This document shows positions 32,581 to 32,649 of a stretch of 53,746 bases of DNA, piece by piece (position 1 is the first letter of the stretch; every line of letters begins with the position of its first letter). The position numbers and the translations under genes are program-made. Under the pieces are notes generated by a model. It had not been told where the DNA came from. It saw nothing but the letters and a program-made list of their open reading frames with translations, and ran no database searches. The DNA is from Octopus sinensis (lineage: Eukaryota): the NCBI RefSeq assembly GCF_006345805.1, contig NW_021834888.1:1-53746 (forward strand). Reading direction: 5' to 3'.

Positions 32581-32649
32581 GCCACTGATGAGAACTTCAC
32601 CTAGCAAATTATTTTATTTGCTAATTAAAGTTCGAAACCTTGGTATAGC
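32581..32649 (+). ncRNA. type I hammerhead with extended stem II, copy 1
   Basis: GCCA-CUGAUGA-GAACUU cacc UAGCAAAU uauuuu AUUUGCUA auua AAGUUC-GAA-ACC uu GGU-A-UAGC; one C-A mismatch in stem I. Confidence 0.8.

What the first reader, a model, noticed from the sequence alone, without database searches (positions are those of the whole stretch)
32581..32649. Long-stem-II hammerhead, copy 1: three compensatory base-pair changes versus copy 2
Seen by aligning with 36322-36391. Stem I pair 1.1 changes A-U to G-C and pair 1.4 G-C to C-G; stem II pair 10.2 changes A-U to G-C. The inner hairpin changes U-A-G.. to U-G-G.. (A-U to G-U). Stem III is ACC-uu-GGU vs ACC-au-GGU and the triplet GUA vs GUC. 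The inner 29 nt are 28/29 identical while the flanks are only roughly 65-70% identical by eye. Stem II is unusually elaborate: 6 bp, an internal loop, then an 8-bp hairpin. This is strong evidence of selection on RNA structure and may be an undescribed HHR subfamily; host exaptation like the conserved amniote intronic HHRs is a hypothesis only.
Basis: partly seen in the sequence, partly recalled or inferred. Interest (0 to 1): 0.9.

Follow-up and report, generated by a model that had tools for sequence, protein, structure and literature searches.

The report
Repeat-borne hammerhead ribozymes in octopus DNA
Two diverged copies of a self-cleaving hammerhead RNA motif with an unusually long second stem sit inside a short repeated element of an octopus genome. 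One copy looks intact and the other is decayed, and they fit the known class of hammerheads carried by Penelope-like or retrozyme mobile elements better than a ribozyme adopted by the host.

Summary
The motif is real. Copy 1 (32581-32649, +) has every hammerhead core nucleotide, a 6-bp stem II extended by an internal loop and an 8-bp hairpin, and the cleavage triplet GUA. A strict type-I descriptor hits it, against 0.01 hits expected per shuffled window.

The three compensatory pair changes versus copy 2 (36322-36391) are confirmed (permutation P about 0.003).
- Copy 2 has U3 in place of the essential C3.
- Copy 2 has an A·A mismatch where the G10.1-C11.1 pair should be.
- Copy 1 has an A·C mismatch in its 4-bp stem I.

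Context points to a mobile element:
- The two copies share about 180 nt of 73-76% identical flanking repeat.
- Copy 2 lies in a 1.3-unit direct repeat of about 470 nt, with 33% GC and no coding capacity.
- All ends abut (TA)n/(TG)n tracts.
- Helix III is short and palindromic. Two copy-2 RNAs are predicted to fold into the classic double hammerhead.
- The window holds at least three more hammerheads of other families, and 43 kb of Octopus bimaculoides holds three more.

This matches the type-I hammerheads of animal retrozymes and Penelope-like elements. Host exaptation is unsupported. No further family members could be fetched, so family-wide covariation remains untested.

The parts
32581..32649 (+). 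Hammerhead copy 1, type I, core intact. Layout: stem I 5' strand 32581-32584; CUGAUGA 32585-32591; stem II outer 32592-32597/32628-32633; internal loop CACC 32598-32601 / AUUA 32624-32627; distal 8-bp hairpin 32602-32623 (loop UAUUUU 32610-32615); GAA 32634-32636; helix III A15.1 32637 to U16.1 32644 (ACCUUGGU); H17 = A 32645; stem I 3' strand 32646-32649. Predicted cleavage is between 32645 and 32646.
   Evidence: Sequence. Strict descriptor hit against 0.01 expected per shuffled window. Stem II fold z = -7.5. Pair counts.
36322..36391 (+). Hammerhead copy 2, degenerate. It has U3 at 36326 instead of C3. Unpaired A at 36333 and 36375 flank a 5-bp stem II (A·A where G10.1-C11.1 is expected). 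The distal hairpin is identical to copy 1 except for one A-U to G·U change. Helix III ACCAUGGU (36379-36386) is a perfect palindrome. H17 = C at 36387, so the nominal cleavage site is 36387/36388. Stem I is 4 perfect bp.
   Evidence: Sequence, alignment A2, pair counts. The dimer cofold gives a double hammerhead with an 8-bp intermolecular helix III.
32561..32737 (+). Repeat fragment carrying copy 1. It is homologous to 36300-36483 (73-76% identity). It begins about 20 nt upstream of the hammerhead, directly after a (TA)n tract.
   Evidence: blastn and local alignments.
35936..36552 (+). Element carrying copy 2. It is a 1.3-unit direct repeat with a period of about 470 nt. The parts are left repeat 35936-36085, unique part 36086-36321, hammerhead 36322-36391, and right repeat 36406-36552 (91% identical to the left repeat). 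The unit is non-coding and 33% GC. The reconstructed 470-nt circular monomer folds with z = -2.3.
   Evidence: the repeat finder D14, blastn, sequence, only short ORFs, fold.
32477..32550 (.). (TA)n microsatellite directly upstream of the copy-1 fragment. A min-hammerhead element lies on its other side, on the opposite strand.
   Evidence: Sequence, repeats.
35895..35943 (.). (TA)n(TG)n microsatellite at the 5' boundary of the copy-2 element.
   Evidence: Sequence.
36526..36553 (.). (TA)n tract at the 3' boundary of the copy-2 element.
   Evidence: Sequence.

Best explanation
These are two old, diverged genomic copies of a non-autonomous retroelement of the animal retrozyme / Penelope-like-element (PLE) lineage. 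The element carries a type-I hammerhead ribozyme with an enlarged, two-tier helix II.

How it most likely works. All steps below are inferred from what is established for this class.
1. The element is transcribed as an RNA longer than one unit.
2. Each hammerhead forms a short helix I (4 bp) across the cleavage site and the long helix II.
3. Helix III is only 2 bp plus a palindromic tetraloop, so two hammerheads pair through it into a double hammerhead.
4. The RNA cleaves after GUA or GUC.
5. The unit-length RNA, with 5'-OH and 2',3'-cyclic phosphate ends, is circularised by a host tRNA ligase.
6. It is copied and integrated by a PLE reverse transcriptase and GIY-YIG endonuclease supplied in trans, preferentially at microsatellites.

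The compensatory changes record selection for the fold in the propagating lineages. After insertion the copies decayed. Copy 1 keeps an intact core but has a weakened helix I. Copy 2 has lost C3 and the 10.1-11.1 pair and is probably inactive.

The nearly invariant distal hairpin of helix II was under the strongest constraint. Its role is unknown. It could make a tertiary contact with the unpaired region beyond helix I, or serve as a protein-recognition element.

Shown here: the motif, its pairings, the repeat context and the predicted dimer fold.
For: - Intact core and three helices in copy 1. The descriptor hit is far above chance.
- Three compensatory pairs, P about 0.003.
- Homology extends about 110 nt beyond the motif.
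- A 150-nt direct repeat at 470-nt spacing surrounds copy 2 at 91% identity. The unit is 33% GC with no ORFs or Pfam domains.
- Microsatellites sit at all element ends. This matches the microsatellite insertion bias reported for PLEs (PMC8557442).
- The predicted minimum-energy fold of two copy-2 RNAs is exactly a double hammerhead with an 8-bp intermolecular helix III. In copy 1 the monomer hammerhead fold (-7.3 kcal/mol) is disfavoured against the minimum-energy fold (-17.6 kcal/mol).
- The architecture matches published descriptions of metazoan PLE and retrozyme hammerheads: helix I of 4-5 bp, enlarged helix II, a small palindromic helix III, and tandem low-GC units of 150-450 bp (PMC4209133, PMC7229834, bioRxiv 10.64898/2026.07.22.740005).
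- The same window holds a canonical type-I hammerhead (1371-1327), a tandem pair of 190-nt units each with a PLE-type min-hammerhead (45839-45473), and another min-hammerhead 190 nt from copy 1.
- 43 kb of O. bimaculoides holds three more hammerheads, one with a 12-bp helix II.
Against: - Only two family members were found. There are none in 43 kb of O. bimaculoides, so multicopy status of this particular family is not shown.
- The tandem is only 1.3 units with one hammerhead.
- No PLE reverse transcriptase is nearby.
- No Rfam hammerhead model reports the motif, even at E up to 10. That test has little weight, because it also missed the canonical hammerhead at 1371-1327.
- Stem I is short and mismatched in the only copy with an intact core.
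- Three repeat pairs are collinear at offsets of 3.74-3.93 kb, which leaves room for a local duplication instead of independent insertions.
- No activity or expression data exist.
Confidence: 0.7

Rival explanations
1. The two hammerheads are the flanking pseudo-LTRs of a single old autonomous Penelope-like element. Their 3.74-kb spacing in the same orientation is typical of a pLTR-ORF-pLTR arrangement.
For: The spacing is 3,741 bp in direct orientation. Cervera & de la Pena 2014 found PLE hammerheads about 3 kb apart flanking a reverse-transcriptase ORF (PMC4209133).
Against: - None of the three + strand frames between the copies, with stops masked, hits any Pfam family at E up to 0.1.
- The interior is filled with microsatellites and other repeat families.
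- The copies share only about 180 nt at 73-76% identity.
- Copy 2 has its own 470-nt partial tandem that copy 1 lacks.
Confidence: 0.08
2. The copies arose by an old local duplication of about 3.8-3.9 kb and diverged in place. The compensatory changes would then reflect selection on these loci, that is, a host function such as an exapted ribozyme or structured RNA.
For: - Three same-strand repeat pairs are collinear with similar offsets: 3739 (the hammerhead element), 3932 (33788-33972 versus 37720-37904) and 3933 (35744-35905 versus 39677-39838).
- The background is only about one pair per 250-bp offset bin.
- The compensatory changes have P about 0.003.
Against: - The sequences between the collinear pairs align no better than random window segments.
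- All three pairs belong to repeat families with further copies.
- The hammerhead pair is more diverged (73-76%) than the other two pairs (81-82%).
- Homology stops at the element edges, and copy 2 has lost C3 and the 10.1-11.1 pair, which does not fit maintained function.
- The neighbourhood is microsatellites and transposon debris.
Confidence: 0.1
3. The hammerhead core is coincidental. The conserved object is just the long AU-rich hairpin of a repeat, for example a MITE-like or miRNA-like inverted repeat.
For: - Only the 31-nt distal part is highly conserved (30/31).
- No Rfam hammerhead hit.
- Copy 2 lacks a consensus core.
- The predicted monomer fold of copy 1 is not the hammerhead.
- The window is rich in hairpins.
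Against: - The full descriptor (helix I, CUGANGA, helix II, GAAA, helix III closed by A-U, H, helix I) is expected 0.01 times per window.
- Compensatory changes fall in helices I and II, next to the core, not in the hairpin.
- In copy 2, 10 of the 11 fixed core nucleotides are retained.
- Five or more other hammerheads occur in 97 kb of octopus DNA.
Confidence: 0.07

Closest known systems
Type-I hammerheads of animal non-LTR retrozymes (Cervera & de la Pena, NAR 2020, PMC7229834; Li et al. 2026 bioRxiv 10.64898/2026.07.22.740005)
   Same: - Type-I topology.
- Helix III of 2 bp plus a tetraloop, as described for invertebrate retrozymes.
- Low-GC, non-coding repeat unit of a few hundred nt in direct or tandem arrangement.
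- Predicted to act within multimeric RNA.
   Different: - The unit here (about 470 nt) is at or above the upper end of the quoted 150-450 bp range.
- Only 1.3 units and one hammerhead survive.
- Helix II is 6 bp + internal loop + 8 bp, against the canonical 4 bp.
- Helix I is 4 bp, with no recognisable loop 1 / loop 2 contact.
- Expression as circular RNA was not tested.
Hammerheads in the pseudo-LTRs of Penelope-like elements, min-HHR and its variants (Cervera & de la Pena, MBE 2014, PMC4209133)
   Same: [quoted passage not shown]
- Helix II larger than usual.
- Small palindromic helix III, implying dimeric action.
- Copy 2 even has the unpaired nucleotide between A9 and 10.1.
- Association with microsatellites (PMC8557442).
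- Genuine min-HHRs of this type lie in the same window.
   Different: - No adjacent reverse-transcriptase / GIY-YIG ORF.
- Copy 1 lacks the extra nucleotide after A9.
- Helix III is present (2 bp + loop) rather than absent.
- Helix II is much longer than the 6-8 bp described.
Satellite-DNA hammerheads of newts, Schistosoma and cave crickets, which act as double hammerheads
   Same: Type I, repeat-borne, with a weak palindromic helix III that is stabilised in a dimer. The cofold of copy 2 reproduces this.
   Different: Those have short helix II hairpins with conserved loop 1 / loop 2 tertiary contacts and occur in long arrays. Here helix II is two-tiered and no array is present.
   Same: Type-I hammerheads in animal genomes, thought to derive from retroelements.
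   Different: Those are single-copy, syntenic and keep intact cores. Here there are two diverged copies inside a repeat, one of them with a broken core, and no Rfam match. Synteny was not testable.

Membership tests
Hammerhead ribozyme (type I) | Conserved core: C3 U4 G5 A6 N7 G8 A9 ... G12 A13 A14 ... A15.1-U16.1, with H17 not G | tested here: met
   Copy 1 has every position (CUGAUGA, GAAA, A-U closing pair, GUA). Copy 2 fails at C3 (it has U, with G8 unchanged).
Hammerhead ribozyme (type I) | Three helices around the core, including the highly conserved G10.1-C11.1 pair; helix I open-ended | tested here: met
   Copy 1: helix I is 4 bp with one A·C mismatch, helix II has G10.1-C11.1 plus 5 bp, and helix III is 2-3 bp. 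Copy 2: A·A at 10.1/11.1, or equivalently a 5-bp helix II with an unpaired A on each side.
Hammerhead ribozyme (type I) | Covariation supporting the helices across homologues | tested here: inconclusive
   Three compensatory pairs, one G·U and two broken cells in two sequences. Permutation P about 0.003. No further homologues in the window or in 43 kb of O. bimaculoides, so no R-scape-type test was possible.
Hammerhead ribozyme (type I) | Match to curated covariance models (Rfam Hammerhead_1, _3, _II, HH9, HH10) | tested here: not met
   No hammerhead hit at gathering score or at E up to 10, even in a 91-nt search. The same search also misses the compact canonical hammerhead at 1371-1327, so this test has low power here.
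Hammerhead ribozyme (type I) | Site-specific self-cleavage, and a helix I / helix II tertiary contact | not testable with these tools
   Needs transcription and cleavage assays.
Animal non-LTR retrozyme | Tandem repeats of a unit of about 150-450 bp, each unit carrying a type-I hammerhead | tested here: inconclusive
   A direct repeat of 150 nt at 470-nt spacing (91% identity) gives 1.3 units with one hammerhead. The upstream unit is cut off by a microsatellite. TRF reports no array. Copy 1 is a solitary fragment of about 180 nt.
Animal non-LTR retrozyme | Low GC content and no coding capacity | tested here: met
   33% GC. Only short chance ORFs, with no homologues among 5.8 billion proteins.
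Animal non-LTR retrozyme | Many dispersed copies in the genome; expression as linear and circular unit-length RNA | not testable with these tools
   No cephalopod genome or transcriptome could be searched by nucleotide. Pattern scans of the metagenome, viral and prokaryote collections found nothing.
Penelope-like element pseudo-LTR | Hammerhead-bearing repeats flanking a reverse transcriptase + GIY-YIG endonuclease ORF | tested here: not met
   No Pfam domain in the three + frames of 32650-36321.
Penelope-like element pseudo-LTR | Hammerhead architecture: helix I of 4-5 bp, enlarged helix II, small palindromic helix III or none (PMC4209133) | tested here: met
   Helix I is 4 bp. Helix II is 6 + 8 bp. 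ACCAUGGU is a perfect palindrome and ACCUUGGU a near palindrome. A dimer fold is predicted.
Exapted intronic hammerhead (HH9/HH10-like) | Single-copy, syntenic conservation with an intact core across species | not testable with these tools
   There are two copies in a repeat, one with a broken core, which argues against exaptation. No orthologous loci were available.

The most novel reading that the evidence does not exclude
Cephalopods carry a populous, so far uncatalogued subfamily of type-I hammerheads in which helix II is extended by an internal loop and a strongly constrained distal hairpin. That hairpin would replace the classic loop 1 / loop 2 contact, or recruit a protein such as the element's reverse transcriptase or a ligase. 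The subfamily escapes current Rfam models, so ribozyme counts in cephalopod genomes would be large underestimates.
Probability: 0.25. Interest if true: 0.45.

Novelty: new member of a known kind. Interest (0 to 1): 0.3.

Why it matters
The value is modest.
- It extends the catalogue of repeat-borne type-I hammerheads to octopus. At least nine hammerhead-like motifs occur in 97 kb.
- Standard Rfam scans miss them. The only cephalopod figure I found is 235 Hammerhead_1 hits in the giant squid (PMC6962438).
- The two-tier helix II with a nearly invariant distal hairpin is a testable handle on how hammerheads with a minimal helix I reach an active fold.
- For genome annotation, such motifs should be read as markers of retrozyme or Penelope-like repeats, not as candidate host ribozymes.

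Tried and rejected
- **Rfam at gathering and at E up to 10.** There were no hammerhead hits, even for a canonical control, so this is uninformative rather than negative.
- **More family members by covariance model R1.** Only the two known copies were found in the window, and none in O. bimaculoides loci L001/L002.
- **Exact-pattern scans for the conserved 30-mer.** Nothing was found in the metagenome, viral or prokaryote collections. A scan for an abundant octopus SINE-like repeat in metagenomes also found nothing. Those collections therefore hold no detectable DNA of this genome.
- **Paralogues via chance ORFs that span the element.** Three ORFs are not on record. A protein search with both 91-aa reading frames across copy 2 gave 0 hits.
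- **Octopus DNA via Helitron helicase homologues.** This yielded two O. bimaculoides loci. One ENA locus turned out not to be octopus. Further sampling was judged too low-yield.
- **Single-PLE hypothesis.** Rejected, because there is no reverse-transcriptase or endonuclease domain between the copies.
- **Segmental duplication.** Collinear repeat pairs were noted, but the interiors are not alignable above background. It is kept as a minor rival.
- **Extended helix I with a closing stem.** No pairing conserved between the two copies was found by inspection of alignment A1.
- **Literature string search for the motif sequence.** 0 papers.

Full report
**What is there.**
Copy 1 (32581-32649, + strand) reads GCCA CUGAUGA GAACUU CACC UAGCAAAU UAUUUU AUUUGCUA AUUA AAGUUC GAAA CC UU GG U A UAGC. 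It contains every conserved hammerhead nucleotide, in type-I order:
- 5' strand of helix I, then CUGAUGA, then the helix II hairpin;
- GAAA, then the helix III hairpin closed by A15.1-U16.1, then H17 = A, then the 3' strand of helix I.

Cleavage would fall between 32645 and 32646.

Copy 2 (36322-36391) aligns over 70 columns with 54 identities.

**Is it more than chance?**
- A strict descriptor finds copy 1. The descriptor requires a 4-bp helix I with at most one mismatch, CUGANGA, at least 4 bp of helix II, GAAA, helix III closed by A-U, and H not G.
- The same scan finds one other site in the window (1371-1327, minus strand).
- Only 3 of 300 dinucleotide-preserving shuffles of the window give any hit (mean 0.01).
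- The long helix II folds far better than shuffles, with z = -7.5 for copy 1 and -3.6 for copy 2.

**The compensatory changes.**
Counting on the alignment gives:
- three pairs changed on both sides and still paired (1.1/2.1, 1.4/2.4 and 10.2/11.2);
- one A-U to G·U change in the distal hairpin;
- two broken cells: A·C at 1.2/2.2 in copy 1, and A·A at 10.1/11.1 in copy 2.

Placing the 15 observed substitutions at random gives three or more compensatory pairs in 0.3% of trials.
- Copy 2 has U at position 3. C3 pairs with G8, and natural variants covary to U3-A8 (PMC3088659). C3 or G8 single mutants abolish cleavage in a PLE hammerhead (PMC11167929).
- Copy 2 has lost G10.1-C11.1. That is the most conserved pair of the motif apart from A15.1-U16.1 (PMC3088659).
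- The motif overall (77% identity) is no better conserved than its flanks (70% and 74%). Only a 31-nt stretch covering the distal hairpin stands out, at 30/31.

**Helix III and the dimer.**
ACC-UU-GGU cannot close a 2-nt loop as a 3-bp hairpin. It is 2 bp plus a tetraloop, the form described for invertebrate retrozyme hammerheads (PMC7229834). ACCAUGGU in copy 2 is a perfect palindrome.

ViennaRNA cofolding of two copy-2 RNAs gives, as the minimum-energy structure, a double hammerhead (-39.8 kcal/mol). It has both helix II hairpins, helix I formed in trans, and an 8-bp intermolecular helix III.

For copy 1 alone the hammerhead fold (-7.3 kcal/mol) is much less stable than the minimum-energy fold (-17.6). 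In the latter, GCCA pairs with UGGU.

A weak palindromic helix III that requires dimers is the classic property of metazoan type-I hammerheads (PMC4209133, PMC7229834, PMC3088659).

**Genomic context.**
- Homology between the two loci runs from 32561 to 32737 and from 36300 to 36483, at 73-76% identity. The hammerhead is therefore part of a longer repeat.
- Around copy 2, 35936-36085 repeats 36406-36552 at 91% identity with 470-nt spacing. This is a 1.3-unit direct repeat whose upstream unit is cut off by a (TA)n(TG)n tract.
- The unit is 33% GC and non-coding. As a 470-nt circle it is predicted to be 66% paired (z = -2.3).
- The copy-1 fragment starts right after a (TA)n tract (32477-32550), and the copy-2 element ends in (TA)n (36526-36553). 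PLE-family elements show an insertion bias for microsatellites (PMC8557442).
- Between the two copies, no + strand reading frame hits any Pfam family. They are therefore not the terminal repeats of a recognisable autonomous PLE.

**Other hammerheads nearby.**
The window also contains:
- a compact canonical type-I hammerhead with a palindromic helix III (1371-1327, minus strand);
- two tandem 190-nt units on the minus strand (45839-45473; 91% identical), each with a PLE-type minimal hammerhead: an unpaired A after A9, G10.1-C11.1, and GAAA-CGU-A without helix III. One of these two has an A6U core mutation;
- another minimal hammerhead at 32397-32363 (minus strand), just across the (TA)n tract from copy 1, with a degenerate relative at 20474-20646.

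These fit the min-HHR definition of Cervera & de la Pena (PMC4209133) point by point.

The window is from an Octopus genome. A Helitron helicase fragment (43896-44411) has its best named matches in O. bimaculoides, and repeats match O. bimaculoides loci at up to 94% identity.

In 43 kb of O. bimaculoides fetched around two such genes, three further hammerheads appear:
- One has a 12-bp two-tier helix II.
- All three have a palindromic helix III.
- Two are bounded by microsatellites.

Hammerhead-bearing repeats are thus dense in octopus DNA, and an extended helix II is not unique to this locus.

**Interpretation.**
The best reading (about 0.7) is that these are two decayed insertions of a retrozyme-like, PLE-dependent non-autonomous element whose type-I hammerhead has an enlarged helix II.
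- The compensatory changes and the invariant distal hairpin record selection on the propagating element.
- The U3 and A·A changes in copy 2, and the A·C mismatch in copy 1, are post-insertion decay.
- The life cycle is inferred from the literature on this class, not shown here. It comprises multimeric transcript, dimeric self-cleavage, ligation to a circle, reverse transcription in trans, and integration at microsatellites.

**Caveats.**
- I could not obtain more members of this particular family. The covariance model finds only the two copies.
- No public collection reachable by nucleotide pattern holds this genome, and the ORF route failed. Family-wide covariation, copy number and synteny therefore remain untested.
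- Rfam's hammerhead models report nothing. They also miss the canonical control.
- Three repeat pairs, including the hammerhead pair, are collinear at offsets of 3,739-3,933 bp. This could mean an old local duplication. However, the intervening sequence aligns no better than random segments, and the hammerhead pair is more diverged than the other two pairs. I rate this rival at about 0.1.

**Novelty.**
This is a new member of a known kind. The long two-tier helix II goes beyond the 4-8 bp described in the papers I read, and could define a cephalopod subfamily, but that needs a genome-wide survey. Host exaptation in the manner of the amniote intronic hammerheads has no support.

Noticed in passing
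window 1327-1371 (- strand): A compact canonical type-I hammerhead: GGUG-CUGAUGA-GAGGA(CAAUAA)UCCUC-GAAA-UAUGCAUAU-A-CACU. Its helix III is perfectly palindromic. It is the second hit of the strict descriptor, has no other copy in the window, and is missed by Rfam even at E up to 10.
   Followed up: partly
window 45473-45839 (- strand); related fragments at 9683-10019: Two tandem 190-nt units (91% identical), each bounded by (TA)n. Each carries a Penelope-type minimal hammerhead (CUGAGGA-A-GAGC GUAG GCUC-GAAA-CGU-A). The second unit has CUGUGGA (A6 to U). This is a textbook dimeric min-hammerhead / retrozyme-like arrangement.
   Followed up: partly
window 32363-32397 (- strand), within repeat 32291-32467; relative at 20474-20646 (+): A minimal hammerhead of the same type lies 190 nt from copy 1 on the opposite strand, on the other side of the (TA)n tract 32477-32550. 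Two different hammerhead elements therefore diverge from one microsatellite. The copy at 20540-20562 is degenerate.
   Followed up: partly
L002 (O. bimaculoides CM046610.1) 9451-9517, 9626-9668, 13432-13480: Three more type-I hammerhead motifs occur in 22 kb of O. bimaculoides. The first has a 12-bp two-tier helix II with U·U at 10.1/11.1. The first two share the leader AUGUGGAC and are separated and bounded by (TA)n/(TG)n tracts, and an assembly gap abuts them.
   Followed up: partly
window 32561-32682 / 33788-33972 / 35630-35905 versus 36300-36430 / 37720-37904 / 39399-39838: Three same-strand repeat pairs are collinear at offsets of 3739, 3932 and 3769/3933 bp. Two of them agree to within 1 bp. 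The sequences between them are not alignable above background. This may be a relic of an old duplication of about 3.9 kb, or coincidence among abundant repeats.
   Followed up: partly
window 32127-32265 and 33176-33264: There is a near-perfect long hairpin (62-nt arms, 98% complementary, 15-nt spacer) and a second palindromic hairpin. Both give weak hits to miRNA models on both strands, far below gathering scores. They are probably MITE-like inverted repeats.
   Followed up: no
window 43896-44411 (+): A 171-aa ORF encodes a Helitron-type Pif1 helicase 2B-domain fragment. Its homologues carry PF21530. The best named match is O. bimaculoides at 76% identity, which identifies the window as Octopus DNA.
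   Followed up: yes
window 46845-47096 (+): By eye, this stop-free frame reads like the C-terminal part of a mariner/Tc1-type transposase (…HNDNAPYH…PYLPDLAPAGFYLF…). It was not tested against a profile library.
   Followed up: no
window 31176-31295, 35744-35905, 36564-36700, 36834-36995, 38448-38880, 39404-39838 and others: An abundant SINE-like repeat family (core GGTTCAGTCCCACTG…) occurs in both orientations throughout the window. One copy abuts the 3' end of the copy-2 element.
   Followed up: no
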